DNA of 64,000 nt from Phaeosaccion multiseriatum (GCA_965112735.1 OZ218952.1:4278001-4342000); one strand, 5' to 3'; shown: positions 12,134 to 60,361, counted from the stretch's first letter. The notes: generated from the sequence alone by a model not told the origin. A program made the numbers and translations.

Positions 12134-13412
12134 CTACTCCCCTCCACCGACCCGCATCACCACCCTCCCCGGGTTACGCTCATCTTCCCATACTTCGAGG
12201 CCCTGCCTCTCGTGCAAATAGGCCAGCACCACGGGCTTGAGAACGCTGACCCCGTCCCTACTGTCTCGGCCTCGGCCGGTGATGACTTTGATCTCAGCCC
12301 CCCGCCTTCGCCTCTGAGAGCACGTGACGAAGCGCTGCCTTGCTCGTTCCCCTGGTGAAGTCGTGCAAGTCCATATCCTGTCCCAGTTTCTTCCAGTGTG
12401 TGAAGACCCCTTGCGACACGGCCTTTCGTACAGCTCGTCAGCAGCCTCCTGCAAAGATTCAATGGTAGCTGTGTAGGTGATTTGATCGGGGGCAAACCCT
12501 TGCTCCTTCATCTCACTGAAGAGCTTCAAGGCCTCCACGTGGTTGTTGCCACATGCAGTGATGACTGCGTTATAGCTGATCACATTAAGCTTCAGTCCTA
12601 CCGCCTAAATCTCAAAGAGCTTCAGGGCCTCCACGTGGTTGTTGTCGTTGCCACATGCAGTAATGGCTGCACTGTAGCTGATCATATCAGGCTTGAGTCC
12701 TACGTCCTTCATCTCCTTTAAGAGCTTCAGGGCCTCCACGTGGTTGTCGTTGCCACATGCACTAATGGCTGCACTGTAGCTGATCACATTTGGCCTGAAT
12801 CCTACCCCCCTCATCTCTTTGAGAAGTTCAGGGCCTCCACGTGGTTGTTGTGGTTGCCACATGCAGTAATGGCTGCACAATAGCTCATCACATCAGGCTT
12901 GAGTCCTACGCCTTCATCTCATTCAACAGCTTCACGGCCTCCACTGGTTGTTGTCGTTGCCACATGCGGTACTGGTTTCATTGTAGCAGTGCCGATTTGG
13001 CTTGAGTCGTACCGTCTTCAGCTCACTGAAGAGCTTCATGGCCTGGGTACATTCTCGCCAGCTCTGCTACACGCCGTGGTGATAATTTTCTGAAGGAACT
13101 CCCTTCATCTCCCAAGGTCTCCACGTGGGTCTTACCGTTGGCTCACGCGGTAATGACTGAGTTATAGCTGTGCTCATATGGCTCAATGTCTTTCTTCTTC
13201 ATCTCTTCCAGAAGTATCAAAGCGCCAAAAAATGAAGCGCGGAAGTCACAGCATTGAGACAGTACAGATCGGGCTGCAGGCCCTCTAGCCGTGCGCGTTC
13301 CAGAGTAGGCACCACCCTATTCCAGTCCTTGGTTGCACCCTGAGCTTGGATCCCTCGCTTGTAGCAGGACACACACAAAAAACTTGGCGACCACGATCTG
13401 CAGGTGGTTCTT
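12134..13412 (-). pseudogene. Decayed PPR-SMR pseudogene, paralog of the 43.7-54.0 kb array
   Basis: Fragments VISYSAAITACGNDNNHVEALKL and C-terminal EIKVITGRGRDSRDGVSVLKPVVLAYLHERQGLEVWEDERNPGRVVMRV match the array genes. There is an in-frame TAG at 12605-12607 (EI* in place of EMK), several frameshifts, and deletions through the N-terminal region. A remnant of the shared upstream motif 'acttggcgaccac' lies at ~13382. Confidence 0.9.
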
Positions 13413-30252: not shown

Positions 30253-30283
<31 letters not shown>

Positions 30284-38311: not shown

Positions 38312-38376
<65 letters not shown>

Positions 38377-41448: not shown

Positions 41449-42239
41449 CTAGACCATGGGATAGGAGGCACAATCCGCCAGACCGCACATGTTCTTCCCA
41501 CGCGCAATCTTAAAGTAACCGTCAAGGCCCCAATCCGCACCCCAAGAGTTCTTGACGAGCCAATAGTCCGTCCCCTCTCCTGCCTCCCCTCCTTCTCCCT
41601 CGGTGCCATAGCCCACCGCCAGCACCGCGTGGTTCACCTCCTCAGGCTCCGTGCCACAAGTTGGGTTGTCATACACGCCAAACGCGAAGGACTTAAAGTC
41701 CGGCGCCACTTGGAAGGCGATGCTCACCGGGCCGACAGTCCCCACAGCTTCGTACAGCTCCTCTTCCGACTTGTACGTGATATTCACAGATCTCTGCACC
41801 GTGGCACCAATGCCCTCTTCGATGAAAGCGCAGTCGCCGCCCACAGCATCGTAAGGGTATGCCTCTTCCGTGTCCAGGCCGGTGTTGTAGCGAACGTACT
41901 CAAACGCGTGCGAAGGGAGGCCTCCGTTGCACCCGTGATTGTCAAAGGCCTCGGCACAGTCCACCAGCTGCTGCTCGCTCAGGAGCACCATATCTCCCGT
42001 CTTGAGGAAGTGGTGGCTCTCCAGGCAGCCTGTGGTGGAGAAGGTCCAGCAAGACCCGCAGTGGCCCTGGTTCTTGACCGGTGATACCGCCCCCTGCTCC
42101 CTCCAGTCCATCTGCTGCGGCACCTGAGTAGGGTCGGGTCTCTGAAACTGACCCAAGGTGTGGGTGGCGGAGCAGTTCTGGGAGCTTGTGTGGATCATCA
42201 AGTAGGCATCCTTGAACTCGTCCCTGCGTGTACGTACGT

Positions 42240-42294
<55 letters not shown>

Positions 42295-42298
42295 GTGC

Positions 42299-42365
<67 letters not shown>

Positions 42366-43124
42366 GTGCGAGTGTGTGTGCGCGTGAGAGAGAGTCAGAG
42401 TGAGTATAGAGAGGGAAAGTGTGTATACTTGGGTGTGTACTACGTGCGGGCCCTTCCTCCCCGCTTCCCTCCCTCCTTACCTCCCTCCCACCCCCACTCA
42501 CCAGCTCATATCCGAGAACTTATTAAGACCCAGCCCGTAGCCCTTCGCCGGCGGGCCTCCCACGGCAACACCCAGGGGAGCAGCGCCCGCGCTTTCCCGC
42601 AAGTTGTGCTCAGATACCTCCTGCAGTGTCTCGCGGAAGATGGCGAACCGCTTCCTCTCCTCCGCCACGGAGCTGTAGCTCTTGCCGTGCGTCTTCTTCC
42701 ATTCATCAAACATGGCCGGGGCCGCAAGCAGCGTCTCTTTGAGCTGGAAATCGTGACTCCTCTCCTCCTCCTGCAAGCTCAGAGACGGCGTGAACATATC
42801 TCTCATCATGGCGTTGCGCGGGGCAGCCTCCCCATCAACCTCCGCGCCAGCCTTCCCCGCGGCGTCAGCACAGTGGAAGACACTCGGTGGAAGTTTCGAA
42901 GCCATGTCTGAAGGAAGGCACTCAGAGGGCACCGCACCGGCCTCGCACCAAACGCAGGCGACACCGGATGCGCTGTCGGTACTGCCCGCGCACGAACTGG
43001 CGCTTTCGGAGAGGCATGAGCTATCCAACACATCGCCAAGAACTTTTTGAAGCAGACCGCTCTCAGCACTGGTACTGGCCACGCATGACACTGCCAGCAC
43101 CTCAAGAATGTGAATGCCTCGCAT
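41449..43124 (-). CDS. CTSH: Cathepsin H-like papain-family (C1A) cysteine protease; 2 exons (43124-42502, 42223-41449)
   Basis: Signal peptide; I29-type prodomain (FDEWKKTHGKSY...RFAIF...LNKFSDMSW); minichain-like SQNCSATH; catalytic QGHCGSCWTFS, VNHAVLAVGYG and YWLVKNSWG. Confidence 0.93.
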
Positions 43125-43721: not shown

Positions 43722-45311
43722 CTAATTCCCTCCATCGACCCGCATCACCACCCTCCCCGGGTTGTGTTCGTCTTCCCATACTTCGACGCCAGGCCTCTGC
43801 TGCAAATAGGCCAGCACCGCGGGCTTGAGAACGCTGACACCATCCTCGCTGCCTCGGCCTCGCCCTGTGATGACTTTGATCTCAGCTCCCGCCTGCTCCC
43901 CTGAGAGCACGTGACGAAGCGCTGCCTTGCTCGTTCCCCTGGTGAAGTCGTGCAAGTCCATCTTCCTCCCAGGCTCCAGCCAGTGTGTGAAGACCCCTTG
44001 CGATACGGCCTCTGCGTATAGCTCGTCAGCAGCCTCCTCGTCGCCACCCTCCTGCAAAGCATCAACGGTAGCGCTGTAGGTGATCTGATTGGGGGCAAGT
44101 CCTTTCTCCTTCATCTCTTTGAAGAGCTTCAGGGCCTCCACGTGGTTGTTGCCGTTGCCACACGCAGTGATGGCTGTGCTGTAGCTGATCACATCTGGCG
44201 TGAGTCCTACCGCCTTCATCTCATTGAAGAGCTTCAGGGCCTCCACGTGGTTGTTGCCGTTACCACACGCAGTAATGGCTGCACTGTAGCTGATCACATT
44301 TGGCGTGAGTCCTATCGCCTTGATCTCATTGAAAAGCATCAGGGCCTCCACGTGGTTGTCGCCACATGCAGTAATGGCTGCACTATAGCTGATAACATCA
44401 GGCCTGAGTCTTGCCGCCTTCATGTCTCTGAGGAGCTTCAGAGCCTCCACGTGGTTGCTGCCGTTGCCGCATGCAGTAATGGCTGCATTGTAGCTGATCA
44501 CATTAGGCCTGAGTCCTACCGCCTTCATCTCCTTGAAGAGCTTCAGGGCCTCCACGTGGTTGTTGTCGTTGCCACATGCAATTATGGCTGAATTGAAGCT
44601 GATAACATCAGGCTTGAGTCCTACCGCCTTCATCTCATTGAAGAGGTTGAGGGCCTGTGTACTTTCGCCAGCTCTGCTACACGCCGTGATGATAGTGCTG
44701 TAGGTCTTCTCGTTAGGGGCGATTCCCTCGTCCTTCATCTCATTGAATGTCTTCAGGGCCTCCACGTGGTTGTTGGCATTGGCACACGCAGTAATGGTGG
44801 TACTAAAGCTGATAACATCTGGCTTGAGTCCTTCCTCTTTCAAAACCCTGAGGAGATGCAAGGCCTCCACGTGGTTCTTGGCATTGGCACAAGCGGTAAT
44901 GACTGAGTTATAGCTGACAACACTCGGCTCAATGCCCTCCTTCTTCATCTCTTCCAGAAGTTTCAAAGCGCCCCTCCACCGCCCGCACTTCCCAATCGCG
45001 GAAATCGCAGCACTCAAACAGTACAGATTGGGCTGCAGGCCCTCTCGCCGTGCGCGTTCCAGAGTAGGCGCGACTCTCTTCCAGTCCTTGCTTGCACCCA
45101 GAGCTTGGATCTCCCTCATGAGCTGCTTCTGCCTCGCCTTGTCACCCCCCCCCCGTCCCCCATTCGAGTAGCAGGAGCATTGTGGGCATTGTGGAAGGGA
45201 GAGCGCAGTCTCTGCCCCACGTTCTGCAGCAGTGCTTCCTAACGGTCTTGCCCTCCTGCCAATGCAGGTCCTGACCACCCTCCTCAACGACATCACTCGC
45301 ATCATCAGCAT
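43722..45311 (-). CDS. PPR-SMR protein 1 (9 PPR motifs + cap + Smr domain), intronless, 529 aa from the MLMMRV start
   Basis: 35-aa P-class repeats (VISYSAAITACGNGNNHVEALKLFNEMKAVGLTPD). The C-terminal MDLHDFTRGTSKAALRHVL...VITGRGRGS...LKPAVLAYL...NPGRVVM is an Smr domain. Start chosen by homology with the paralogs. Confidence 0.92.
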   Translation of the reverse strand: MLMMRVMSLRRVVRTCIGRRARPLGSTAAERGAETALSLPQCPQCSCYSNGGRGGGDKARQKQLMREIQALGASKDWKRVAPTLERARREGLQPNLYCLSAAISAIGKCGRWRGALKLLEEMKKEGIEPSVVSYNSVITACANAKNHVEALHLLRVLKEEGLKPDVISFSTTITACANANNHVEALKTFNEMKDEGIAPNEKTYSTIITACSRAGESTQALNLFNEMKAVGLKPDVISFNSAIIACGNDNNHVEALKLFKEMKAVGLRPNVISYNAAITACGNGSNHVEALKLLRDMKAARLRPDVISYSAAITACGDNHVEALMLFNEIKAIGLTPNVISYSAAITACGNGNNHVEALKLFNEMKAVGLTPDVISYSTAITACGNGNNHVEALKLFKEMKEKGLAPNQITYSATVDALQEGGDEEAADELYAEAVSQGVFTHWLEPGRKMDLHDFTRGTSKAALRHVLSGEQAGAEIKVITGRGRGSEDGVSVLKPAVLAYLQQRPGVEVWEDEHNPGRVVMRVDGGN

Positions 45312-45917
45312 TGCAGAGGTGTGTACGCAGAACAGCTTCTCCTCGGTTTTGGTGGGTTGTTTGAGACAAGAAGTCCTTATACTTGGCGACCACCTACAGC
45401 AGCTGGTACTTCGTGAGCGGCTTTTCACACACACACCCACACACACACACACACACACATACACACCCACACCATACACCCACACACGCCCTCAACCCCC
45501 CGACCCACGGCATCGCTACTGAGCGTGAGATCCCTCTTGCTCGTGTGTCATAGTCTATGCAGCGCTTGCTCCAGGCCTGCTTCCTCTGGTGTATAAAGAA
45601 CGAATCCTATTCAAAATTGGGGTGGGGGCTCTTCCCCTGCCCAGCCCTTCTGTGAAAAGGGCAAGCGAATTGTAGCGAGAGATACATCCATGAGTACTTC
45701 TCGTAGTCATATCACGCTCTCCAGGCGCGCTGATCTATCGACACTCAAGGGCGCCACACTCGACGCCCAACTCATCTGCCGAGGGGGGCGGGCCGCGTCT
45801 CCCCCCCGAGCAGGTCAACAGCCTAGCTACCCCCGCTCAACAGACGTTCTCGAGCGTCCGGTAGGAGCTGCAGACACCACAGCTTCACCATCAGCGCTCT
45901 ACTCAGACGGCGAGACA

Positions 45918-46001
<84 letters not shown>

Positions 46002-46161
46002 CCCGTCCCCAGTCCAGAAGCGGGCCCAAAAGAATGGCCTGGCCAGGCATGGTTCCTCCCGAGGGAAAAGGAGCTACCACCAGGAAATGCACAGACAGAC
46101 AGACAGGCCGACACATCCCCAGAAGCGACAGGATGGCACGCCAAACACAACCCGGGTGTGT

Positions 46162-47970
46162 CTAACTCCCTCCATCGACCCGCATCACCACCCTCCCCGG
46201 GTTGTGTTCGTCTTCCCATACTTCGACGCCAGGCCTCTCCTGCAAGTAGGCCAGCACCGCGGGCTTGAGAACGCTGACGCAGTCCTCGCTGCCTCGGCCC
46301 CGGCCTGTGATGACTTTGATCTCACCCTCCACCTTCTCCACTGAGAGCACGTGACGAAGCGCTGCCTTGCTCATTCCCCGGGTGAAGTCGTGCAAGTCCA
46401 TCTTCCTCCCAGGTTCGAGCCAGTGTGTGAAGACCCCTTGCGACACGGCCTCTGAGTACACCTCGTCAGCAGCCTCCTCGTCGCCACCCTCCTGCAAAGC
46501 GTCAACGGTAACCCTGTAGCTGAACACATTTGGCTTGAGTCCTACCGCCTTCATTTCTTTGAAGAGCTTCAGGGCCTCCACGTGGTTGTTGCCGTTGCCA
46601 CACGCAGTGATGGCTGCGCTGTAGCTGATCACATTAGGCTTGAGTCCTACCGCCTTCATCTCATTGAAGAGCTTCAGGGCCTCCGCGTGGTTACTGCCGT
46701 TGCCACACGCAGTAATGGCTGCACTGAAGCTGATCACATTAGGCCTGAGTCCTACCGCCTTCATCTCTTTGAAGAGCTTCAGGGCCTCCACGTGGTTGTT
46801 GTCGCCACATGCAGTGATGGCTGTGCTGTAGCTGATCACATCAGGCGTGAGTCCTACCGCCTTCATCTCTTTGAAAAGGTTCAGGGCCTCCACGTGGTTG
46901 TTGCCGTTGCCACACGCAGTAATGGCTGCACTATAGCTGATCACATTCGGCTTGAGTCCTGTCGCCTTCATCTCATTGAAAAGCTTCAGGGCCTCCACGT
47001 GATTGTTGTCGCCACATGCAGTAATGGCTGCACTATAGCTGATAACATCAGGCTTGAGTCCTACCGCCTTCATCTCCTTGAAAAGATTCAGAGCCTCGAC
47101 GTGATTGCTGCCGTTGCCACACGCAGTAATGGCTGCGTTATAGCTGATCACATTTGGCTTCAGTCCTACCGCCTTCATCTTCATCTTCATCTCCTTGAAG
47201 AGCTTCAGGGCCTCCACGTGGTTGTTGTCGTTGCCACATGCAGTAACGGCTGCACTGTAGCTGATCACATCAGGCGTGAGTCCTACCGCCTTCATCTCCT
47301 TGAAGAGCTTCAGGGCCTGGGCACTTTCGCCAGCTCTGCTATACGATGTGATGATAGTGCCGTAGGTCCTCTCGTTAGGGGCGATTCCTTCCTCCTTCAT
47401 CTCATTGAAGAGCTTCAGAGCCTCCACGTGGTTGTTGTCGTTGGCACACGCAGTAATAGTGGTACTGTAGCTGATAACATTAGGCTTGAGTCCTACCTCC
47501 TTCATCTCCCTGAGCAGACGCAAGGCCTCCACGTGGTTCTTGGCATTGGCACAAGCGGTAATGACTGAGTTATAGCTGACAACACTCGGCTCCATGCCCT
47601 CCTTCTTCATCTCTTCCAGAAGTTTCAAAGCGCCCCTCCACCGCCCGCACTTCCCAATCGCGGAAATCGCAGCACTCAAACAGTACGGATCGGGCTGCAG
47701 GCCCTCTCGCCGTGCGCGTTCCAGAGTAGGCGCGACTCTCTTCCAGTCCTTGCTTGCACCCAGAGCTTGGATCTCCCTCATGAGCTGCCTCTGTCTCGCC
47801 TTGTCACCCCCCCCCTGTCCCCCATTCGAGTAGCAGGACCATTGTGGGCATTGTGGAAGGGAGAGCGCAGCCTCTGCCCCACGTTCTGCAGCAGTGCTTC
47901 CTAACGGTCTTGCCCTCCTGCCAATGCAGGTCCTGACCCTCCTCAACGACATCACTCGCATCATCAGCAT
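46162..47970 (-). CDS. PPR-SMR protein 2 (11 PPR motifs + cap + Smr domain), intronless, 602 aa
   Basis: Same architecture as copy 1, with a near-identical N-terminus and Smr domain. Confidence 0.93.
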   Translation of the reverse strand: MLMMRVMSLRRVRTCIGRRARPLGSTAAERGAEAALSLPQCPQWSCYSNGGQGGGDKARQRQLMREIQALGASKDWKRVAPTLERARREGLQPDPYCLSAAISAIGKCGRWRGALKLLEEMKKEGMEPSVVSYNSVITACANAKNHVEALRLLREMKEVGLKPNVISYSTTITACANDNNHVEALKLFNEMKEEGIAPNERTYGTIITSYSRAGESAQALKLFKEMKAVGLTPDVISYSAAVTACGNDNNHVEALKLFKEMKMKMKAVGLKPNVISYNAAITACGNGSNHVEALNLFKEMKAVGLKPDVISYSAAITACGDNNHVEALKLFNEMKATGLKPNVISYSAAITACGNGNNHVEALNLFKEMKAVGLTPDVISYSTAITACGDNNHVEALKLFKEMKAVGLRPNVISFSAAITACGNGSNHAEALKLFNEMKAVGLKPNVISYSAAITACGNGNNHVEALKLFKEMKAVGLKPNVFSYRVTVDALQEGGDEEAADEVYSEAVSQGVFTHWLEPGRKMDLHDFTRGMSKAALRHVLSVEKVEGEIKVITGRGRGSEDCVSVLKPAVLAYLQERPGVEVWEDEHNPGRVVMRVDGGS

Positions 47971-48324
47971 TGCAGAGGTGTGTACGCAGAACAGCTTCTC
48001 CTCGGTTTTGTTGTTTTGTTTGAGACAAGAAGTCCTTATACTTGGCGACCACCTGCAGCAGCTGGTACTTCGTGAGCGGCTTTTTGATGGGTGTTTGAAT
48101 TTTTAATTTAGGGCGGGGTGGGCAGGGGGGGTGAGACGCAATGGGTCTCACCCGGGGTGACACCTAGCACGCCCGCGGCTTTTCATCACGCTCGACCTCG
48201 AGGGCTAAGTTCCCCGGGGCGGTGAGACATTACTTTTAGACAACCATAGATGGCACTTAAGGGTGTAATATATAGACCATCACGCTCCACATCACGCACA
48301 CACACATGCACACACACACACATA

Positions 48325-48372
<48 letters not shown>

Positions 48373-49032
48373 ACCCACACCATACACCCACACACGCCCT
48401 CAACCCCCCGACCCACGGCATCGCTACTGAGTGTGAGGTCCCTCTTGCTCGTGTGTCATAGTCCATCCAGAGCTTAATCCAGGCCTGCTTCCTCTGGTGT
48501 ATATAGAACGAGTCCTGGTTCCGCTGGGGTGGGGGCTCTTCTTCTCGTCCACTTTCTCTCCAAGGCAAGCGAATTGTTGATACATGTGTCCAAAATTACT
48601 TTTAAAATCATACCGCGCCATCCCGCAGGCACGTTGATACATCAGCATTATCCCCGCTCGACAGGCGTTCTCGGGCGTCCGGTTGGAGCTCTGCACAAAC
48701 CATAGCTTCCCCATCAGCAGCAGGGCTCTGCTCACAGGGCGAGATAGGCAGGCAGACAAGACCCGTCCCCAGTTTTGAAGTGGGCCCGAAAGGGTGGCCT
48801 GGCCATCCATGCTTCCGCCCAGGGGGGGGCGGGGGGTAGGCCCACCCACCTCTCGCCGGCCCGCTGGCTCGAGCTGCCCGCCATGGATGGAGACGTCGAC
48901 TAGCTAGAAGCTACTGCCAGGAAATGCGATCATCCAGCTCACTCCCGTTCAGAGAAGAGTGCACAGACAGAGAGATAGGCCGACACGCCTCAGCATCACA
49001 CAAACATTAATACAAAAGCGGAGTTGGTCTAC

Positions 49033-50520
49033 TTACTTCCCCAAGTGAATTCGCATCACCACTATCCCCGGATTCCGCTTCTGTACCCACGCTTCCACAC
49101 CCGGCCTCTCCTGCAAATAGGCCAGCACCACGGGCTTGAGAACGCTGACACCGCCCTCGCTGTGTCGGCCCCGCCCCGTCATGATTGTAATCTCTGTCCT
49201 TGCCTTCGCCTCTGCGAGCACGTGACGAAGCGCTGCCTTGCTTGTCCCCTTGGTGAATGAGTGCAAGTCCATCGTCCGCACCTGCCCCATTTTCTTCCAG
49301 TGGTTCCAGACCCGTTGCGACACAGCCTCTGCGTACAGTTCGTCAGCAGCCTCCTCGTCGCCAGCCTCCTCCAAAGCGTCAATCGTAGCGTTGTAGGATC
49401 GTTTATCAGGGGCGAGTCCTTTCTCCTTCATTTCATTGAAGAGCTTCACGGCCTCCACGTGGTTTTGGCCGTAACCACATGCAGCAACTACTGCATTAAA
49501 GCTATACACATTCGGCTTGAGTCCTACTGCCTTCATCTCATTGAAGAGCTTCAGGGCCTCCACGTGGCTGTTGTCATTGCCACATGCAGTAATGGCTGCA
49601 CTATAGCTTAAAACACTTGGCTTTAGTCCTATCGCTTTCATCTCCTTGAAGAGTTTCAGGGCCTCCATGTGGTTGTTGTCGTTGCCACATGCAGTAATGG
49701 CTGCACTGTAGGTCCTCTCATCAGGCCTGAGTCCTACCGCCTTCATCTCACCCAACAGCTTCAGGGCCTCAATGTGGTTGTTGTCGTTGCCACATGCAGT
49801 AATGGCTGCACTGTAGCTGATCACATTTGGCTTGATTCCTACCGCCTTCATCTCATTCAACAGCTTCAGGGCCTCCACATGGTTGTCTTCGTTGCCACAC
49901 ACAGTAATGACTGCGTTGTAACAGCATACATCTGGCGTGATACCTACCGCCCTCATCTCGAAAAATAGCTTCATGGCCTGGGTACTTTCGCCAGCTCTAC
50001 CACACGCGGTTATGGCAGCACAGTACGTCCTCTCTTTAGGGGCGATTCCTTCCACCTTCATCTCCCTGAATAGCTTCAGGGCCTGGGTACTTTCGCCAGC
50101 TCTGCCACACGCCGATATGATTGCAGTATAGCTGTACTCATCTGGTTCAATACCCTCCTTCTTCATCTCTTCCAGAAGTTTCAAAGCGCCCTTCCACCGC
50201 CCGCACTTCCCAATCGCGGAAATCGCGGCATTGAGACAGTACAGATTGGGCTTTAGCCCCCCTCGCCGTGCGCGTTCCAGAGTAGGCGCGACCCTCTTCC
50301 AGTCCCTGCTTGCACCCAGAGCTTGGATTTCCCTCATGAGCTGCTTCTGCCTCGCCTTGTCAACCCCCCCCTGTCCCCCCGAGTAGCAGGACGATTGTGG
50401 GCAGTGTGGATGGGAGAGCGCAGCCCCACTTTGCGCAGCGGTGCTTCCGAACGGTCTTGCCCTCCTACCAATGCAGGTCCTGACCACCCTCCTAAACGAC
50501 ATCACTTGCATCAACAGCAT
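49033..50520 (-). CDS. PPR-SMR protein 3 (8 PPR motifs + cap + Smr domain), intronless, 495 aa
   Basis: PPR repeats; Smr domain with MDLHSFTKG and the complete TGRGRHS motif. Confidence 0.93.
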   Translation of the reverse strand: MLLMQVMSFRRVVRTCIGRRARPFGSTAAQSGAALSHPHCPQSSCYSGGQGGVDKARQKQLMREIQALGASRDWKRVAPTLERARRGGLKPNLYCLNAAISAIGKCGRWKGALKLLEEMKKEGIEPDEYSYTAIISACGRAGESTQALKLFREMKVEGIAPKERTYCAAITACGRAGESTQAMKLFFEMRAVGITPDVCCYNAVITVCGNEDNHVEALKLLNEMKAVGIKPNVISYSAAITACGNDNNHIEALKLLGEMKAVGLRPDERTYSAAITACGNDNNHMEALKLFKEMKAIGLKPSVLSYSAAITACGNDNSHVEALKLFNEMKAVGLKPNVYSFNAVVAACGYGQNHVEAVKLFNEMKEKGLAPDKRSYNATIDALEEAGDEEAADELYAEAVSQRVWNHWKKMGQVRTMDLHSFTKGTSKAALRHVLAEAKARTEITIMTGRGRHSEGGVSVLKPVVLAYLQERPGVEAWVQKRNPGIVVMRIHLGK

Positions 50521-51380
50521 CGCAGATCGCCCTCACGGCACGCACGCAGATGCAGGTCGATGCAGGCAAGGAGAACAGAAGGAACCGACTTGGCGACCAC
50601 CCGCAGCAGTTGGTACTTCGTGATTCCCGATACTCTGTCAACTCTGAGAAGTAACGTCTCTTTTCCTCTATGTATGACTCGTCAGTCCTCCCCATCGGAA
50701 CAAAGTTGATACCAGCCAGAACCCTGTGTCGAATCGATCGTTCGTGCCGGGCCCTCGAGGCAAGATGCAAGAAAAAGCACATACGCACGCACACACACAC
50801 ACACACACGTGCACACCATACACCCACACTTGAGAGTGAGGTTCCTCTCGCTCGTGTTTCATAGTCATAGAGAGTAAGACCTGCTTCGTCTGGTGTATAA
50901 AGAACGAGTCCTATTCAAAGCTGAGAAGGGCAAGCGAATTGTAGCGAGAGATACTTCCATGAGTACTTCTCGTAGTCATATCACGCCCTCCAGGCGCGCG
51001 CTGATCCATCGACACTCAAGGGCGACACACTCGACGCCCAACTCATCTGCCGAGGGGGGTATGTCTCCCTCCCGAGGAGTCCCGAGGAGGTCCACAGGAG
51101 GTCCACAATCTACCCCTGCTCAACAAACTTTCTCGAGCATCCGATAAGAGCTGCTGAAACTGCAGCTTCACCGTCCGGGAGAGGCAGATAGGCAAGCCCT
51201 GTCCGCAGCCCACGAGCGGGCACGAAAGGGTGGCCTGGCCAGCCATCACAGCCATATGCTTCCGGCCCAAGAACATCGCTCTGCAGGCAGGCTATGCGAT
51301 CATCCAAATCACTCCCATTCAGAGAAGAGTGTGCATCCCAGAAGACAGGATGGGAAGCCAAACACAACCCGGCTGTCTGT

Positions 51381-54029
51381 CTACTTCCCACCAGCAGCGA
51401 CTCGCATCACCACCAACCCTGGGTTGTGCTCATTTCCCAATGCTTCGACGCCAGGCCTCTCCTGCAAATAGGCCAGCACCGCGGGCTTGAGAGCGCTGAC
51501 GCCGTCCTCATTGCCTCGGCCCCAGCCTGTGATGACATTGATATCACCTTCCACCTTTTCCACGGAGAGCACGTGACGAAGCGCTGCCTTGCTCGTTCCC
51601 TTGGTGAAGGCGTGCAAGTCCATCTCCCTCCCCAGCACCGCCCAGTGTGTGTAAATACCTTGCGAGATGGCCGTTGCGTACAGTTCGTCAGCAGCCTCCT
51701 CGTCGCCACCGTCCTGCAAAGCGTCAATCGTAGCGTTGTAGCTTGCGAAGTCCGGCACGAGCCCTACCGCCTTCATCTCCCTCCACAAATCCAGCGCCTT
51801 TTCACTCTTGCCTGCTCTACCGCACGCTGTGATGGTAGCAGTGTAGACGAGTAGATTAGGGGGGCTTCCCTCTGCCTTCATCTCCTTCAATAAAGCGAAT
51901 GCCTCTGCGTCTTGGTTGGCGTTGGCAAACGCGGTGATGGTGGCACTGTAGCTGTAGGCGTCAGGACGAAGTCCCTCTGTCTTCATCTCCCTCAGCAATC
52001 TCAATGCCTCCTCACTTCTCCCAGCTCTGCCACACGCCATGATTGTGGCATTGTAACTGATAACGTTGGGGTCGAGTCCTTCCCTCTTCATCTCCCTCAA
52101 CAACGCCAATGCCACCTCATTCCGGCCAGCTCTGCCAGACGCCGTGATGGTGGTGTTGTAGGCGATTTCGTTAGGAGGGACTCCTACGGTCTTCATCTCT
52201 TTGAAGAGCTTCACGGCCTCCAAGGAGTTGTTGTCGTTGGCACAGGCAGTAATGGCGGCGCTGTAGCTCGTCACATCCGGCTTGAGTCCTTCCGCCTCGA
52301 TCTCACGGAGTAACTTCAGGGCCTCTGCACTTTGGCCAGCCCTGCCACATGCCGTGATGGTGGTGTTGTAACTTACAAGATCGGGGGCGAGTTCTACGGC
52401 CTTCATCTCCCTCAGCAACTCGATGGCCCGTAAGTGGTCCCTGGTGTTGGAGAAAGCTGAAATGGTGGCATTGTAGCTTTCCTCTGAAGGCTTGATCCCC
52501 TCCTTCTCCATCTCCCTCAGCAAGCTCAATGCCTCGGGACTACAGCCGACTCGGCTACACGCCGTGATTGCGGCATTGTAGCTGTAGACGTCTGGCTTGA
52601 GACCCTCTGCCTTTATCCGCTTGAACAAGCTCAGGGCCTCCTCACGGTTTTTGCCGTTGGCGCATGCTGTAATGGCTGCGTTATAGCACCGCACGTTCAG
52701 CTCGAAACCCTCCTCCTTGATTTCCTCCAGCAGGGCCAACGCGCCCTTCCAGCGCCCGCACTTGCCAAGCGCGGAAATCGCAGCACTCAAACAGTGCAGA
52801 CCGGGCTTCAGGCCTTCTCGCCGTGCGCGGCTCAGAGTAGGCGCAATCCTCCTCCAATCCTTCCTGCTTCCCAGAGCTTGGATCTCTTTCACGAGCTGCC
52901 CCTGCCGCAAAGTGTCATCCCCCCAATTAGAGTAGTAGGGCCATTGCTGCGGCAGCTGCTTCTGCTGAGGGAGAGTAGCCTCGATCCGCCGCAATTCTTC
53001 TCCCTCTTCAGTAGCGGTTGCATTGTAACAGTGCCCATTCGGCTTGATTCCAACCGCCTTCATCTCCTTGAATAGCTTCAGGGCCTGTGTACGTTCGCCA
53101 GCTGTGCTACACGCCGTGATGATAGTGCTGTAGGTCCTCTCGTTAGGGGCGATTCCCTCCTCCTTCATCTCATTGAAGAGCTTCAGGGCCTCCACGATGC
53201 TCTTGTCGTTGGCACATGCAGTAATGGCTGAAGTGTAGCTCGTAACATTGGGCTCGATGCCTTCCTCTTTCAGCTCTCTGAATAGCTTCAGGGCCTCTGC
53301 ACTCTTGCCAGCCCTGCCACATGCCGTGATGGTGGTGCTGTAGGTAATGACACTGGGGGGCAATCCTACGGCCTTCATCTCCCAAAAGAGCTTGATGGCT
53401 CCCATGTAGTCCTCCGCAGCGGAGAACGCTGAAAGGGTGGCATTGTAGCTTTCCTCCGTTGGCTTGATCCCCTCCCGCTCCATCTCCCTCAGCCAGCTCA
53501 ATGCCTCGGCACTATGGCCGACTCGGGCACATGCCGTGATTATAGCATTGTAACTGTATGCGTTTCGCTTGAGACCCTCTGCCTTTATCCGCTTGAACAA
53601 GTTCAGTGCCTCCTCACGGTTTCTGCCGTTGGCGCATGCTGTAATAGCTGCGGTATAGCACCGCTCGTCCGGCTTAAAGCCCTCCTTCTTCATCTCTTCC
53701 AGCAGGGCCAAAGCGCCCCTCCACCGCCCACACTTCCCAAGCGCAGAAATCGCAGCCTTCAAACAGTCCCGACTGGGCTTCAGGCCCTCTCGCCGTGCGC
53801 GTTCCAGAGTAGGTGCAACTCTCTTCCAGTCCTTGCTCGCACCCAGAGCTTTGATCTCCCTCATGAGCTTCATCTGCCGCAAATGTTTATCCTCTTTAGT
53901 AGAGAACTTCTGGTGAGGGAGGGACGAGTAGCAGGGTCTCGTCACCCTCCTCAACGACATCGTTCGCATCATCAGCATGTTTTGTATCCCTCTTATGACG
54001 AGAAGAAGAACTGTGAGTACCCCTTCCAT
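51381..54029 (-). CDS. PPR-SMR protein 4 (two PPR tracts of 7 and 10 motifs + Smr domain), intronless, 882 aa; homologous MLMM start at 53978
   Basis: Two copies of the N-cap (EIKALGASKDWKRVAPTL / EIQALGSRKDWRRIAPTL); Smr domain with ITGWGRG. Confidence 0.92.
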   Translation of the reverse strand: MEGVLTVLLLVIRGIQNMLMMRTMSLRRVTRPCYSSLPHQKFSTKEDKHLRQMKLMREIKALGASKDWKRVAPTLERARREGLKPSRDCLKAAISALGKCGRWRGALALLEEMKKEGFKPDERCYTAAITACANGRNREEALNLFKRIKAEGLKRNAYSYNAIITACARVGHSAEALSWLREMEREGIKPTEESYNATLSAFSAAEDYMGAIKLFWEMKAVGLPPSVITYSTTITACGRAGKSAEALKLFRELKEEGIEPNVTSYTSAITACANDKSIVEALKLFNEMKEEGIAPNERTYSTIITACSTAGERTQALKLFKEMKAVGIKPNGHCYNATATEEGEELRRIEATLPQQKQLPQQWPYYSNWGDDTLRQGQLVKEIQALGSRKDWRRIAPTLSRARREGLKPGLHCLSAAISALGKCGRWKGALALLEEIKEEGFELNVRCYNAAITACANGKNREEALSLFKRIKAEGLKPDVYSYNAAITACSRVGCSPEALSLLREMEKEGIKPSEESYNATISAFSNTRDHLRAIELLREMKAVELAPDLVSYNTTITACGRAGQSAEALKLLREIEAEGLKPDVTSYSAAITACANDNNSLEAVKLFKEMKTVGVPPNEIAYNTTITASGRAGRNEVALALLREMKREGLDPNVISYNATIMACGRAGRSEEALRLLREMKTEGLRPDAYSYSATITAFANANQDAEAFALLKEMKAEGSPPNLLVYTATITACGRAGKSEKALDLWREMKAVGLVPDFASYNATIDALQDGGDEEAADELYATAISQGIYTHWAVLGREMDLHAFTKGTSKAALRHVLSVEKVEGDINVITGWGRGNEDGVSALKPAVLAYLQERPGVEALGNEHNPGLVVMRVAAGGK

Positions 54030-54346
54030 ATTACCAACACGTTCGCCTGCCCGGTCATCACTCTCCTTTTTTTAGAACGCTTTTTTTCTTAGATTGTGGC
54101 TTCCTCGCCCTCCCAATCTCTATGTGACCCCCTTCCTTCACACCACTCCTGCCCTTGCTTTTCTATTTCCTCTTCTCTGTCTGTCTCTCTCCCTCTCTTC
54201 TCTTCTTCCATCCTTTCTCCCTCTTTTCTATCTTTCCTTCCGGTTTGCTCTCGCTGCACCTCTAATCCCACGACCTGGGAATATGCGACGGCGGAATCTG
54301 CTGCATCCCGCAGCGCGAAAACGAATGTCCTGAGGGCTGGTGTGGA

Positions 54347-56491
54347 ATGAGGGGCACCACAACGTCATGTCGACGAGCGCACCACTGCTGGATCGCTCTT
54401 CTGTTCGTCGTATGTCTCGTTGGATGGGTCAGAGGTCTCGAGGCCGACCATGCAGACGTTTCCCACGATTCCTCTCGCTTGCAGTCCCTTGGACGGTTGC
54501 ACGAGGAGCTTACGAAGCTTGCACACGGCGGAGATTACCCCGCGATGATGAGGCTCTTAATCGAGGAGGAAAGGAAGGTAGGTAGGCGTGATGATGATGA
54601 CGCGGCACCACATGTATTGCTTACAGGCCGGTGGATTTTCGTGCCTCCCTCTAACTGTATACTTCTACCTGCGCCACTTCCTCCCTCCCTCCCTCCCTCC
54701 CCGCTTATTCTCGCCACTTCCTCCCTCCCTCCCTCCCTCCCCGCTTATTCTCTCTATTGGGGGGGGGGGGGCAGTCTGGAAGTCTTGTTACTGCTTCTGA
54801 GGGACGAACGCCAAGCCTCTACTTCTTCCTGGGCCTCGCTCTCCACGGCCTCGGTAGCGTGGAGTCTGCAATCACCGCCTTCCGCGAGGCAGTTTCAGTC
54901 CAGTTAAGTCCTCGCCCCCAAGTCTTTTGTCACGCCCACTCACCTACTGCATCCATGAACGAACCACCCAGCCTCTCTCTGTGCGTCTCACCGCCTTGCC
55001 ATTCCTCTCCTATCCCCCTCTATCTGCAGACCTCGAGACATTGGGAGCTGGCTGAACCTGGGGGACAGTCTCTTACAATCGCAAGGTCCCGGCAGCGCTG
55101 TACAGGTAAGCATGGAAACCGTACTTGCCAGACTACCCTCCCCCCCCCCCCCCTTCACGAGCCTTCCCACTGTCCTGCCCTTCACCCTTCTTCCTCCCCT
55201 CCCATCAGGAGAGTTGTAAATATGTCTCTCGATGCGGTGTCCCCTTTATTTCGTTCATTCCCACCCACACGTCAACAGTCGTAACCCGGACACACACACA
55301 CGGAAGAGACAAGGAACCGACGAAACCTCTCGCCCTCTTCCTCTCTCGTCCTGCCCTTGCTCCATCTCCAGGTCTACGAGGGCATGCTTGCCCTGAATCT
55401 GCCCTTCGACATTAGCAAGCTCTACAAAGCACGCCAATGGGCGGCGGACTGGCGCGACGCGGATGTGATGGCCGCGCAACTAGTACAAGAGTTGATTGAG
55501 GCCAAGACCAAGGGACTCAGTGCACCCTTCTCACCGGCCGACTTTGCAGATTGCCATCCCTTATTATTGCGATGGATGACGGAGGGTATGCGGGTCTGCC
55601 GGAATCATACCTCGGCGACAGCGACTACAACAACGACAACAGCGACAATCCACGAAGTAGTGGCACCGCCACCAAGAGCCTTCAACAACGTCACCCTCTC
55701 CACCTCCCCCTCCCCAGGGCGGGGCAGCAGAGAACGACTTCGAGTGGGCTTTCTGTCGTCGGATTTTGGCGTGCATCCAGTGTCGCAGCTGTTACGAGGG
55801 GTGCTGGCAGGGGGCAATGGGGTGGGGCTCAATACCACTCTCGTCGAGGTCCACTGCTTTTCACTGGGGCAGCAGGATAGCTGGTGGAAGCGCAACATCT
55901 CCAGTCAAGTGCATCACTTTGAGGAAATGGGCGCCCTCAGCGTGCAGGACGCGGCAGCAAGGATTGGAACCTTCGATCTGCATGTGTTGGTGGACCTCAA
56001 CAGCCACACGCTCGGGACGGGCCTGCCTATTATGCGCCACTTAGCGGCGGCGGCGGCTGCTGCTGCTGCTGTTGTTTCGCCAACTGCTGCTACTACTGCT
56101 GCTGTATCACCAACTGCTACTGCTGCCGTGGTGCAGGTGTCCTGGCTTGGCCTGCCCCGCACGACCGGGGCTCCTTTCATTGACTTCTTCCTCTCCGACG
56201 CCGTCGCCTCTCCTCCTGCGGAGATGGCGCCTCATTTCCGAGAGAAGCTCATGCTGCTGCCCACGCCCATCTGCTACATGGCCAACGACTTCAATCAGAT
56301 GCACGGTAGCGCGGTGCTCGAGCCGAGGGCGAAGCGTATGGGCATCCCCGGTCTGCAAGACGTATCCGATGCGGCATTCCTCTTCGCAACGTTCAGCAAC
56401 TACCAGAAGATGAGCAAGGAGGCTTGGACGGCGTGGATGAACATCCTACAGCGCACTACTGCCCCTGCTGCGGAGAGCGTGCTGTGGATAC

Positions 56492-56529
<38 letters not shown>

Positions 56530-58331
56530 ATGGGGGTGAAGAGGCACGTAGATGCACGCCCCCAACGTTGTGTGTGTGTGCGTGGGTGTGTGTTTTCGTG
56601 TGTGTGCGTATGTGTGTGTGTGCGTATGTATGTGGGTGTGTGGGGGCGTTTTTCTGTAGTGTGTGCGTATGTCCTCTTGTGTTCACCAAGAGGTCCGTCG
56701 CTCATCTTTACCCCCCCCCCGCCCCACCCCCTCCCTTCCCAGAACTATAAAGGCTCCTCAGATGCGAATGTGAACTTGAGAACGGAAATGAAGGCAAGGG
56801 GTGTACATCCGCAGCGTCTCCTCACCGTTGAAATGCTCCCCTGGATTGAGGTGAGCTGGCTTGTCCCGCTCTCTTTCCTTCTTCCCCACCTTCCTCCCCC
56901 CTCTCTCTTCCTCCTTCTCCTCCCTTTCCTCCTTCCGAAATAATGTCACCACAACATCTCCTCCCATGAATTGGCTCATTCTCACTCTACTCCTTCGACC
57001 CCCCCCCCAAATAGCATGTGCATGCCAAAACGACGGCGGACCTGGTGCTGGACACGTTCCACAAAACAGGACACACCACCTCGCTGGACGCGCTATGGGC
57101 GGGGGTTCCAATCCTGACGTTACCCGGCGACCGTATGGACCGCCGAGCCACGGCCTCCATGCTCTCCTCCCTCGGCATTGAAGACACAATCGTCGCCAGC
57201 GCTAAGGAGTATGAGGACGTGGCGGTGCGACTCGCCTCGCGGCCGCAGGAGCTGGCGGTGTTGCGTAAGAGGTTTGAGGAGGCACGTACGAGGCAGGGGG
57301 GGCTCTTTGACACGTTTAGTTTTGCCGAGGCGCTACGGAGGGCAATGCAAGCTGCGGTGGAGGTTCGAGTGGCGGCAGAAGAAGGACGGCAGAGGCCAGC
57401 CATGCATGTTTTCTTTCCGGGTAGCACGGCAGCAGCAGCAGTAGGAGGAGGAGGGGGAGGGGGAGGAGAGAAGGTGGGCAAGCTGCCGTCCTTTCCGTCA
57501 CCTCTTCAGCCGGAGCTGCTGCAGCAGCAGCAGCAGCAGCAGGAGGAGGAGGAGGAGGAGCCAGAGCGATCGTCAGCAGCAGCAGCAGCAGCAGGAGCAG
57601 GAGCAGCAGCAGCAGCAGGAGCAGGAGCAGCAGCAGCAGCAGGAGCAGCAGCAGCACCAGAAGGAGTGACGGCACTTGCCCTCAACAAGGTTATTGCCCC
57701 GCTGCTGCTGCACATCGGGGGCCGCGTGGAGAAGGCCGGCTGGTCCATCGTGGATATTGCCGAGCACCCTCGTGTGGACCTCAAGGCTCCCATGCATCAG
57801 CTCCGAGGCGTGGAGAGCGGCTCAGTCACGGCCATCTACGCCTCCCATGTCCTCGAGCACAGCTCCCACAACCACCACCACCACCACCACCACCACCAGC
57901 ACCAGCAGCAGCAGCACCAGCAGGTGGAGCAGGAGGAGGAGCAACAAGAGGAGCAGTTGGGTTCGGGAGGAGAAGTAGTGAGTGTCCTGGCCACCTTGCG
58001 CGAGTGGCGCCGGGTCCTGACACCCAGCAGCGGCACCCTGTTTGTGGCGGTGCCTGACCTCGCGGCCCTTGCTCGCCTCTACGTAGACCCGGCCTTTGCC
58101 CAGGACAGATTCCTCATTATGCGCATCATGTTCGGTGGGCAGGTGGACGAGTACGACTATCACATGTGCGGGTTCGATTACGACACGCTCGCGGCCTTCC
58201 TCAAGGAGGCAGGATTTTGTGTGTGGGAGCGGGTGAACAGCTTCGGTCTGTTTCAGGACAGCAGCCTTGTGCACGTGAAGGGCCACCCCGTCAGCCTTAA
58301 CGTGATTGCCCATCCGTGTGCAGTCGTGTGA
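54347..58331 (+). CDS. OGT-like glycosyltransferase family 41 protein with N-terminal signal-like segment, short TPR region and C-terminal class I SAM methyltransferase domain; ~6 exons
   Basis: GT41 motifs: RLRVGFLSSDFGVHPVSQLL, VLVDLNSHT, VQVSWLGLPRTTGAPFIDFFLSD, FSNYQKM, ADLVLDTFHKTGHTTSLDALWAGVPILT. TPR-like segments: LYFFLGLALHGLG and SWLNLGDSL. Methyltransferase motifs LHIGG, IYASHVLEH and EWRRVL..GTLFVAVPDL are in the same exon and frame as the GT41 C-lobe. Confidence 0.87.
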
Positions 58332-60262: not shown

Positions 60263-60361
60263 CCAGAGAACTTGTCTCGTTTCTCGTTTATTGTATCTTA
60301 CCATCCAGTGCCATCCGCTTCTTGCTTCCGTCCTTTTCTCTTTGTTATTCTCGCCACGAAC
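60263..60361. promoter_or_regulatory. Putative 99-bp bidirectional promoter between ALG11 and importin-alpha
   Basis: Divergent ATGs at 60262 (-) and 60362 (+), separated by a relatively AT/pyrimidine-rich spacer. Confidence 0.55.

What the first reader, a model, noticed from the sequence alone, without database searches (positions are those of the whole stretch)
43722..54029. Tandem array of intronless PPR-SMR genes: a candidate diversifying family of sequence-programmable organellar RNA endonucleases
Seen: four head-to-tail paralogs share an N-terminus, an N-cap and a C-terminal Smr domain (DLH...ITGRG...LKP..L..L...NPG) but carry 9, 11, 8 and 7+10 PPR motifs. A fifth, dead copy lies 30 kb away. 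Known: P-class PPR motifs read RNA one base per repeat. Plant PPR-SMR proteins (GUN1, pTAC2, SVR7, SOT1) are a small dispersed set, and the SOT1 Smr domain cleaves RNA. Clustered, fast-turnover PPR genes are typical of plant Restorer-of-fertility-like loci, which lack Smr. Inference: this locus combines Rf-like birth-and-death evolution with a built-in nuclease fold in a non-plant eukaryote, possibly a nuclear system that recognises and cuts changing organellar, selfish-element or viral RNAs.
Basis: partly seen in the sequence, partly recalled or inferred. Interest (0 to 1): 0.9.

Follow-up and report, generated by a model that had tools for sequence, protein, structure and literature searches.

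The report
Tandem PPR-SMR gene array, stramenopile alga
Four neighbouring single-exon genes of a brown-alga-related alga encode RNA-reading repeat (PPR) proteins with a small nuclease-type (Smr) tail; the family is real and reshuffles fast, but RNA cutting and a defence or conflict role are not shown.

Summary
[quoted passage not shown] The Smr motifs are intact (MDLH plus TGRG or TGWG). A fifth copy at 12137-13396 is a pseudogene with many breaks.

The copies are 66-92% identical in DNA, so they are not assembly or haplotype duplicates. Their Smr tails form one clade (100/100) away from all public relatives, which are at most 45% identical.

Turnover is visible in several ways:
- Repeat numbers differ between copies.
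- Copy 4 is an in-frame fusion of two former neighbours and is partly chimeric.
- Divergence between copies 1 and 2 is mosaic, which points to gene conversion.
- The base-specifying residues 5 and 35 change about four times more often than other positions. Their rate is about neutral (omega about 1), so positive selection is not proven.

The N-termini look like mitochondrial presequences. The host is an ochrophyte stramenopile that is not in the databases.

PPR-SMRs in heterokonts, uniform-repeat PPR(-SMR)s in dinoflagellates and heterokonts, and SOT1's programmable cleavage are already published. This scan has also reported the same family many times on other DNA of this genome. RNA cutting, targets, expression and any conflict or defence role remain untested. 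I class it as a new variant of a known kind.

The parts
43722..45311 (-). Copy 1: PPR-SMR gene, 529 aa counted from the conserved Met. Presequence-like N-terminus and N-domain, then PPR r0-r8 at 44088-45026, C-cap repeat at 43983-44087, and Smr at 43725-43982.
   Evidence: Predicted code for r1-r8 is U A G C U A G A.
46162..47970 (-). Copy 2: PPR-SMR gene, 602 aa. PPR r0-r10 at 46528-47688, including two 34-aa repeats and one 39-aa repeat. C-cap at 46423-46527 and Smr at 46165-46422.
   Evidence: It is 85-92% identical to copy 1 in DNA and has two more repeats.
49033..50520 (-). Copy 3: PPR-SMR gene, 495 aa. PPR r0-r7 at 49405-50244, C-cap at 49300-49404 and Smr at 49036-49299.
   Evidence: [quoted passage not shown]
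51381..54029 (-). Copy 4: fused double gene, 882 aa, or 865 aa from the inner conserved Met at 53978. Unit 1 PPR r0-r6 at 53037-53771; unit 2 PPR r7-r16 at 51750-52799. C-cap at 51645-51749 and Smr (TGWG) at 51384-51644.
52800..53036 (-). Fusion junction of copy 4. The C-cap of unit 1 is truncated after YNATAT and joins in frame to the presequence remnant and N-domain of unit 2 (LRRIEATLP..., QLVKEIQALG...).
   Evidence: local alignments to the N-termini of copies 2 and 4 (scores 194 and 171).
12137..13396 (-). Fifth copy: a PPR-SMR pseudogene with several stop codons and frameshifts. The DLH part of its Smr is out of frame with the TGRG part.
   Evidence: It is 76-83% identical in DNA to copies 1-3.
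45312..45426 (-). 5' flank of copy 1. About 115 bp are nearly identical to the flank of copy 2 (47971-48084), and copy 3 shares about 45 bp of it.
   Evidence: Together with dS 0.015 across the first 94 codons, this indicates recent gene conversion or duplication of the 5' end.

Best explanation
This is a lineage-specific, tandemly duplicated family of nuclear genes for organelle-imported, most likely mitochondrial, P-class PPR-SMR proteins in an ochrophyte stramenopile alga.

Shown:
- Each protein has a disordered Arg-rich N-terminus, an N-cap hairpin and 8-17 PPR repeats, most of which carry canonical 5/35 code pairs.
- A family-2 Smr domain with intact xDLH and TGxG motifs is packed directly on the last repeat.

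Inferred mechanism:
- The PPR tract binds a specific 8-17-nt stretch of single-stranded organellar RNA, N-terminus to the 5' end.
- The Smr domain, held just 3' of the bound site, either cleaves the RNA there as SOT1 does, or helps define or protect transcript ends.

Evolution:
- The family evolves by tandem duplication, unequal crossing-over within the repeat tract, gene conversion between paralogs, gene fusion and pseudogenisation.
- The base-specifying residues are the least constrained positions, so paralogs drift or are driven to different RNA words.
For: - Domains: Pfam PPR and Smr hits.
- Smr fold: the tail model has pLDDT 82. Its best Foldseek matches are the PPR-SMR protein in chain G of plastid RNA polymerase structures (E 3e-4), then the Smr domains of N4BP2, MutS2, YdaL and SmrB.
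- Motifs: MDLH plus TGRG or TGWG, matching the family-2 Smr LDXH/TGXG motifs (PMC3200294). By the motif criteria of PMC6662315 these predict nuclease competence.
- Whole protein: the full-length model best matches designer PPR-RNA complexes at 36-45% identity.
- Constraint: the Smr tail has dN/dS of 0.39-0.59.
- Lineage-specific clade: 100/100 support.
- True paralogs: 66-92% DNA identity.
- Recombination: mosaic dS (0.015 at the 5' end against 0.16-0.21 elsewhere); chimeric repeats in copy 4, where r5 and r6 are 87-90% identical to r2 and r3 of copies 1 and 2; the fusion junction; the pseudogene.
- Code positions: they differ in 10 of 22 cells against 64 of 361 at other positions (OR 3.9, p = 0.004, independent pairs), or 14 of 30 against 80 of 492 (p = 2e-4).
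- Targeting: each protein has 5-8 Arg/Lys and 0-2 acidic residues in its first 40 aa. Copies 1-3 have no hydrophobic core there.
- Indirect support for a mitochondrial role: a Hematodinium transcriptome (accession prefix identified via PMC6642578) has several proteins with this tail. That Hematodinium lacks a plastid is from my own knowledge.
Against: - No expression data, RNA targets or organelle genome could be examined.
- Smr Pfam scores sit at or just below the gathering threshold.
- Some plant PPR-SMRs, such as pTAC2 and PPR53, act structurally or as RNA barriers rather than as nucleases.
- Smr dN/dS of 0.4-0.6 indicates only moderate constraint.
- Mitochondrial targeting is a composition-based guess. 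The upstream ATG of copy 4 would add a hydrophobic, signal-peptide-like segment, which could mean plastid targeting.
- The repeat pairs for the code-position test were chosen by me after seeing the similarity matrix.
Confidence: 0.6

Rival explanations
1. The proteins are sequence-specific organellar RNA binders whose Smr domain is not a nuclease in vivo. They would act as barriers or stabilisers of transcript ends, translation activators or structural subunits, like maize PPR53 or plant pTAC2/PAP2. Everything else, including duplication and recombination, is as in the best explanation.
For: The closest structural match of the tail is the PPR-SMR subunit of the plastid polymerase complex, which is a structural subunit. 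PMC6662315 states that nuclease activity is demonstrated only for SOT1 among plant PPR-SMRs. Smr constraint is only moderate (omega 0.4-0.6).
Against: Both family-2 Smr motifs are intact in all four copies, whereas pTAC2 has degenerate motifs (VDVH and SVRG, Table 1 of PMC6662315). The tail is kept under purifying selection in every intact copy.
Confidence: 0.28
2. The array would be an arms-race system like plant Rf-like clusters, but with a built-in nuclease. It would be under positive selection to recognise and cut changing selfish mitochondrial ORFs, mobile elements or viral RNAs.
For: The genes are clustered and turnover is rapid. Code positions 5 and 35, with position 2, are among the four most changed positions. 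Omega at the code positions is 1.35 between the two units of copy 4. Unchecked earlier scan notes report many more clusters in this genome.
Against: Omega at the code positions is about 1.0 overall and 0.45 between copies 1 and 2, from tiny counts, which is compatible with relaxed constraint. No target, no selfish element and no polymorphism data are in hand. Comparable uniform-repeat PPR(-SMR) proteins occur widely in dinoflagellates and heterokonts with no known conflict (PMC12787238).
Confidence: 0.1
3. The family is largely a neutral by-product of a recombination-prone repeat gene. Copies are redundant or decaying, with little individual function.
For: There is one pseudogene and one fusion gene that has lost a Smr domain. 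Omega values are fairly high (0.4-0.8) in the N-terminal and tail regions.
Against: Four ORFs of 495-882 codons remain intact, with omega below 1 in every region that has enough substitutions. Both Smr motifs are invariant, and canonical code pairs are kept in most repeats.
Confidence: 0.1

Closest known systems
Plant PPR-SMR proteins (SOT1/PPR53, GUN1, pTAC2/PAP2, SVR7, PPR-SMR1)
   Same: Both have a P-class PPR tract followed directly by a family-2 Smr domain with LDXH-like and TGXG motifs. The tail model's best structural hit is the PPR-SMR subunit of the plastid polymerase. SOT1 shows that this architecture can be a sequence-specific, re-targetable RNA endonuclease (PMC6662315).
   Different: The plant proteins are a small, dispersed, conserved set with degenerate repeats. 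Here the genes form a tandem array with fairly uniform repeats and lineage-specific copies. The tails form a clade apart from the plant representatives. Targeting is probably mitochondrial rather than plastid.
Uniform-repeat ('SACEK'-type) PPR and PPR-SMR proteins of dinoflagellates and heterokontophytes (Safonov and Berdieva 2025, as summarised in PMC12787238)
   Same: Both have runs of near-identical 35-aa repeats with an (S/T)AC core at positions 9-11, with or without a C-terminal Smr. Public examples P0066, P0040, P0020 and P0013 show 71-87% self-identity at a 35-aa offset and DLH plus (T/A)GxG tails.
   Different: The repeat here reads TACGN...H rather than SACEK...W. Reported counts are 1-5 PPR-SMRs per dinoflagellate species, against four intact copies plus a pseudogene in 42 kb here. 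No tandem arrays or fusion genes are mentioned in the review I read.
Restorer-of-fertility-like (RFL) PPR clusters of flowering plants
   Same: Both are clustered P-class PPR genes that are probably mitochondrial. Both show unequal recombination, pseudogenes, and elevated change at the base-specifying residues (PMC5075784, PMC7380019).
   Different: RFLs lack Smr and are an angiosperm clade tied to cytoplasmic male sterility. Here positive selection is not demonstrated and no conflict partner is known.
Designer consensus PPR proteins (dPPR, cPPR)
   Same: They are the best whole-protein structural matches, at 36-45% sequence identity. Both have uniform repeats whose 5/35 pairs are the canonical SN, SD, ND and NN.
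   Different: The designer proteins are synthetic, have no Smr and have perfectly identical scaffolds. The natural repeats here are about 86% identical in DNA and also vary at positions 14, 15, 25, 30 and 33.
Chlamydomonas NCL cluster of OPR proteins (my own knowledge, Boulouis et al. 2015; not checked here)
   Same: It is a non-land-plant example of a clustered, rapidly diversifying family of helical-repeat organellar RNA-binding proteins.
   Different: It uses a different repeat type (OPR) and has a RAP domain, or none, instead of Smr.

Membership tests
P-class PPR proteins | Tandem 35-aa helix-turn-helix PPR motifs | tested here: met
   Pfam PF01535, PF13041 and PF13812 give E-values of 1e-56 to 1e-142. 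The repeat period is 35 aa. The AF2 model shows 20 helices forming a solenoid, and it matches PPR crystal structures.
P-class PPR proteins | Canonical base-specifying pairs at positions 5 and 35 | tested here: met
   All 8 central repeats of copy 1, 9 of 10 in copy 2 and most in copy 4 carry SN, TN, SD, TD, ND, NN or NS. Copy 3 has 5 of 8.
Smr domain (PF01713), family 2 | Smr alpha/beta fold | tested here: met
   The tail model has pLDDT 82. Foldseek gives probability 1.00 to the Smr domains of PAP2, N4BP2, MutS2 and YdaL. Pfam scores are 19.6-29.2 bits against a 25.7-bit cutoff.
Smr domain (PF01713), family 2 | LDXH-type and TGXG motifs | tested here: met
   MDLH is invariant. TGRG is present in copies 1-3 and TGWG in copy 4. 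The motif definitions come from PMC3200294 and PMC6662315.
Smr domain (PF01713), family 2 | Endonuclease activity | not testable with these tools
   This needs a biochemical assay.
PPR-SMR proteins | A PPR tract with a C-terminal Smr in one polypeptide | tested here: met
PPR-SMR proteins | Organelle targeting | tested here: inconclusive
   The Arg-rich, acid-poor N-termini are disordered in the model. No targeting predictor or localisation data were available.
PPR-SMR proteins | Orthology to a named plant clade (GUN1, SOT1, pTAC2, SVR7...) | tested here: not met
   The window's tails form their own 100/100 clade, separate from the plant tails included. Only four reference tails were included: three from plants and one from Symbiodinium natans.
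Restorer-of-fertility-like PPR | Clustered genes with excess change at base-specifying residues | tested here: inconclusive
   Clustering is met. Code positions change about four times more often than others (p = 0.004), but omega at them is about 1.0, so selection is not shown.
Restorer-of-fertility-like PPR | Membership of the angiosperm RFL clade, without extra domains | tested here: not met
   The host is a stramenopile and the proteins carry Smr.
SACEK-type uniform-repeat PPR | SACEK motif at repeat positions 9-13, with a downstream Trp | tested here: inconclusive
   The repeats here read T-A-C-G/A-N with His in place of Trp. The (S/T)AC core is shared, the rest is not.

The most novel reading that the evidence does not exclude
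The array is part of a genome-wide, natural system of re-targetable mitochondrial RNA endonucleases. Recombination among near-uniform PPR repeats would continually generate new RNA-word specificities, and the Smr tail would cut the bound transcripts. This would be a nuclear counter-measure to variable or selfish mitochondrial ORFs, functionally like Rf-like genes but with the nuclease built in.
Probability: 0.12. Interest if true: 0.8.

Novelty: new variant of a known kind. Interest (0 to 1): 0.45.

Why it matters
If the Smr tails are active, these proteins would be natural, compact, code-readable RNA endonucleases on a scaffold close to designer PPRs. That makes them useful for choosing Smr domains and scaffolds for RNA tools, a need stated in PMC6662315. 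In evolutionary terms, the locus shows Rf-like cluster dynamics (duplication, unequal crossing-over, conversion, fusion, decay) for organellar RNA-binding proteins outside land plants. The idea of nuclear-organelle co-evolution or conflict in stramenopile algae can be tested once the organelle genome and RNA-seq data are in hand. Without those data the locus is an interesting gene family, not a demonstrated system.

Tried and rejected
- Assembly or haplotype duplication: rejected. DNA identity is 66-92%, repeat numbers differ and the flanks are distinct.
- Chance ORFs: rejected by the strong Pfam hits.
- Smr as a false weak hit: rejected by fold prediction and fold search.
- Homolog search restricted to the Smr region: no hits at E <= 1e-3 in the 5.8-billion-sequence database.
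- Exact-sequence look-up of copy 3 in public assemblies: nothing found, so the species stays unidentified beyond 'ochrophyte near brown algae and Chrysoparadoxa'.
- Tandem arrays around public relatives: the Chrysoparadoxa homolog is single and has introns. A metagenomic uniform-repeat PPR-SMR has no annotated PPR neighbours.
- Strict TALE-like variation only at the code residues: rejected. Positions 33, 25, 30, 14 and 15 are at least as variable among the uniform repeats.
- Intergenic and antisense ORFs (45690-46268, 51294-51854, 53514-54092, 54347-54907, 48424-48849, 50492-50827): no Pfam family, so I treat them as spurious.
- Matching predicted RNA words to an organelle genome: not possible, because no organelle sequence of this organism was available to the tools.
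Full report
**What is there.** Region 43722-54029 holds four long minus-strand ORFs. Pfam scores all four as P-class PPR proteins, with E-values of 1e-56 to 1e-142. It also finds a C-terminal Smr domain (PF01713) with E-values of 1e-3 to 1e-6. The Smr scores are 19.6-29.2 bits against a cutoff of 25.7.

The translations share the following parts:
- an N-terminus, MLMMRVMSLRRV...;
- an N-domain, QLMREIQALGASKDWKRVAPTLERARREGL;
- a cap repeat, CLSAAISA.GKCGRW;
- a tract of 35-aa repeats;
- a C-cap repeat, YNATIDALQ.GGDEEAADELY;
- the Smr tail.

The conserved Met of copy 1 is at 45311. The ORF upstream of it runs through a (GT)n tract and is not coding. A fifth copy at 12137-13396 (-) carries many stops and frameshifts, and the DLH half of its Smr is out of frame with the TGRG half.

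**Not duplicates.** DNA identity is 85-92% between copies 1 and 2, about 78-80% between those and copy 3, and 66-72% to copy 4. Repeat numbers differ. Only short flanks are shared: about 115 bp upstream between copies 1 and 2, and about 60 bp downstream. These are paralogs, not assembly or haplotype copies.

**Host.** The window is nuclear eukaryotic DNA. It carries Nup98-96, a cathepsin L gene, a GT41 gene, ALG11 and an ARM-repeat protein. ALG11 is 50-54% identical to brown algae, 50% to Chrysoparadoxa and 48% to Nannochloropsis, and lower to everything else. The host is therefore an ochrophyte stramenopile near the brown-alga group. No protein of this genome is in the public collections by exact match. 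The best PPR homolog is 46% identical.

[quoted passage not shown] Foldseek against the PDB ranks chain G of plastid RNA polymerase complexes first (E 3e-4). From my own knowledge that chain is PAP2/pTAC2, a plant PPR-SMR protein. The next hits are the Smr domains of N4BP2, MutS2, YdaL and SmrB. By sequence, the best PDB hit is the N4BP2 Smr, around ITGRG...LKPAV..YL.

All four copies keep xDLH and TGxG: TGRG as in human N4BP2/B3BP, and TGWG in copy 4 as in GUN1. These are the two motifs that define family-2 Smr domains (PMC3200294). In SOT1 they are tied to DNA and RNA endonuclease activity respectively (PMC6662315). dN/dS of the C-cap plus Smr region is 0.39-0.59 in all pairs, which means constraint is present but moderate.

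The full-length model of copy 3 has pLDDT 84. Residues 1-51 are disordered, followed by ten helical hairpins, with the Smr packed directly on the last one. Its best matches are designer PPR-RNA complexes at 36-45% identity, then PAP2 and PPR10.

**Lineage-specific expansion.** A profile of the tail finds 3591 representatives at E <= 1e-3 among 1.84 billion proteins, so the tail type is widespread. The closest are only 30-45% identical to copy 2, whereas the window copies share 66-90%. In a maximum-likelihood tree of 79 tails, the four copies form a 100/100 clade on a long stem, apart from the plant PPR-SMR tails included. No one-to-one orthologs are visible, but close relatives of this alga are simply absent from the databases. 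The test therefore only excludes conservation at class level and beyond.

**Turnover and recombination.**
1. Copy 2 has two more repeats than copy 1. Some repeats are 33, 34 or 39 aa long.
2. In copies 1-3 the central repeats are about 86% identical in DNA (pS 0.27). They are as similar between genes (85%) as within a gene (87%), and they share non-preferred codons such as ACT, GGA and GTA. This is shared descent or conversion, not convergence. The repeats of copy 4 are ordinary, at 60% identity and pS 0.64.
3. Divergence between copies 1 and 2 is mosaic. dS is 0.015 over the first 94 codons and 0 in the cap repeat, but 0.21 in repeats r1-r3 and 0.16 in the tail.
4. The tail tree is (c3,(c4,(c1,c2))), whereas the PPR region places copy 3 nearer to copies 1 and 2.
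5. Copy 4 is an in-frame fusion. Unit 1 breaks off in its C-cap (…YNATAT) and continues into the presequence remnant and N-domain of unit 2. It has lost one Smr, the spacer and the first few codons of unit 2. Repeats r1-r4 of unit 1 pair with r8-r11 of unit 2 (75-92%), but r5 and r6 are 87-90% identical to r2 and r3 of copies 1 and 2. Unit 1 is therefore itself a chimera.
6. One pseudogene lies 30 kb away.

**Specificity residues.** In positionally matched repeat pairs, positions 5 and 35 differ in 14 of 30 cells, against 80 of 492 for the other positions (odds ratio 4.5, p = 2e-4). Positions 35, 22, 5 and 2 are the four most often changed. With independent pairs only, the counts are 10 of 22 against 64 of 361 (odds ratio 3.9, p = 0.004).

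At codon level, pN at the code positions equals pS of the same pairs. Omega is about 1.0 overall, 0.45 for copies 1 and 2, and 1.35 for the two units of copy 4, against about 0.43 elsewhere. The code residues are therefore the least constrained positions, and 8 of 10 changed between the two units of copy 4. Positive selection is not demonstrated on these small counts. I also picked the pairs after seeing the similarity matrix.

Among the uniform repeats, positions 33, 25, 30, 14 and 15 vary at least as much as positions 5 and 35. The 'TALE-like' picture is only approximate. Predicted words are copy 1 UAGCUAGA, copy 2 CA?AUAGAAA and copy 3 U??CG?AU. They could not be matched to any organelle genome.

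**Targeting.** The first 40 residues of each protein hold 5-8 Arg/Lys and 0-2 acidic residues. In copies 1-3 this stretch has no hydrophobic core, and it is disordered in the copy 3 model. That resembles a mitochondrial presequence and not the signal-peptide-first leader that heterokont plastid proteins need (general knowledge). Hematodinium has several proteins with this tail, including a PPR-SMR-PPR-SMR double protein. The GEMP01 accession prefix was identified as Hematodinium via PMC6642578. That Hematodinium lacks a plastid is from my own knowledge. This fits a mitochondrial role but remains an inference. The upstream ATG of copy 4 would add MEGVLTVLLLVI, which is hydrophobic, so plastid or dual targeting of that copy cannot be excluded.

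**Comparison with what is known.**
- PPR-SMR proteins were already reported in brown algae and diatoms (PMC3858433).
- Dinoflagellates have 1-5 PPR-SMRs per species. They and heterokontophytes have PPRs, including PPR-SMRs, with runs of near-identical 'SACEK' repeats (PMC12787238, citing Safonov and Berdieva 2025).
- I confirmed such proteins in public data. P0066, P0023, P0040, P0093, P0020 and P0013 show 71-87% self-identity at a 35-aa offset, and several have DLH plus (T/A)GxG tails.
- SOT1 is a sequence-specific PPR-SMR endonuclease that has been re-targeted by recoding (PMC6662315).
- Rf-like clusters show the same cluster dynamics in angiosperms (PMC5075784, PMC7380019).

Three things seem undescribed in the papers I could search:
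- a tandem array of PPR-SMR genes;
- fusion, chimerism and decay within that array;
- enrichment of changes at the code residues outside plants.

The Chrysoparadoxa homolog is a single gene with introns and is not in an array.

**Earlier scan notes.** Unchecked notes from this scan say the same family was reported many times on other DNA of this genome, including clusters 752 kb, 571 kb and 68 kb upstream and a copy 18 kb downstream. Those follow-ups reached verdicts similar to mine. I did not verify those loci.

**Verdict.** This is a real, fast-reshuffling, lineage-specific PPR-SMR gene array, most likely encoding mitochondrial sequence-specific RNA-binding proteins with a motif-intact Smr domain. 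Cleavage, targets, expression and any conflict or defence role are untested. I class it as a new variant of a known kind, of moderate interest.

Noticed in passing
window 53979-54029 (-): Copy 4 has an in-frame ATG 17 codons upstream of the conserved Met. It would add a hydrophobic segment (MEGVLTVLLLVIRGIQN) in front of the presequence. In a heterokont, a signal-peptide-like start could redirect the protein to the plastid or give dual targeting.
   Followed up: partly
P0002 (Hematodinium transcript, 998 aa): A public Hematodinium protein has the architecture PPR-SMR-PPR-SMR, with both Smr tails retained. It looks like a read-through or fusion of two tandem PPR-SMR genes, which parallels the fusion in copy 4 here.
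   Followed up: partly
window 45430-45485 and about 45960-46030: A (GT)n microsatellite lies just upstream of copy 1, and a (TGTC)n microsatellite lies downstream of copy 2. These are possible recombination-prone sequences between the units.
   Followed up: no
window 41449-43124 (-): A cathepsin-L-type cysteine protease is split over two ORFs: the I29 propeptide at 42498-43124 and the peptidase C1 domain at 41449-42501. This implies an intron or a frame change between them.
   Followed up: no
window 28630-40664 (+): A Nup98-Nup96 nucleoporin gene is spread over several ORFs: the GLEBS motif at 28630-30057 and Nup96 at 36248-38074 and 38397-40664. The region is the most GC-rich of the window, at 61%.
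   Followed up: no
window 54347-58331 (+): GT41 (OGT-like) glycosyltransferase pieces lie at 55357-56943 and 57018-58331, directly flanking the array. An earlier scan note calls this a GT41-methyltransferase fusion. I did not check that.
   Followed up: no
window 58523-60559 (-) and 60065-62098 (+): The mechanical ALG11 ORF overlaps the start of an ARM-repeat protein ORF on the other strand by about 500 bp. The ALG11 Pfam match begins near residue 208 at profile position 35, so its true start is probably near 60050 and the overlap is likely only apparent.
   Followed up: partly
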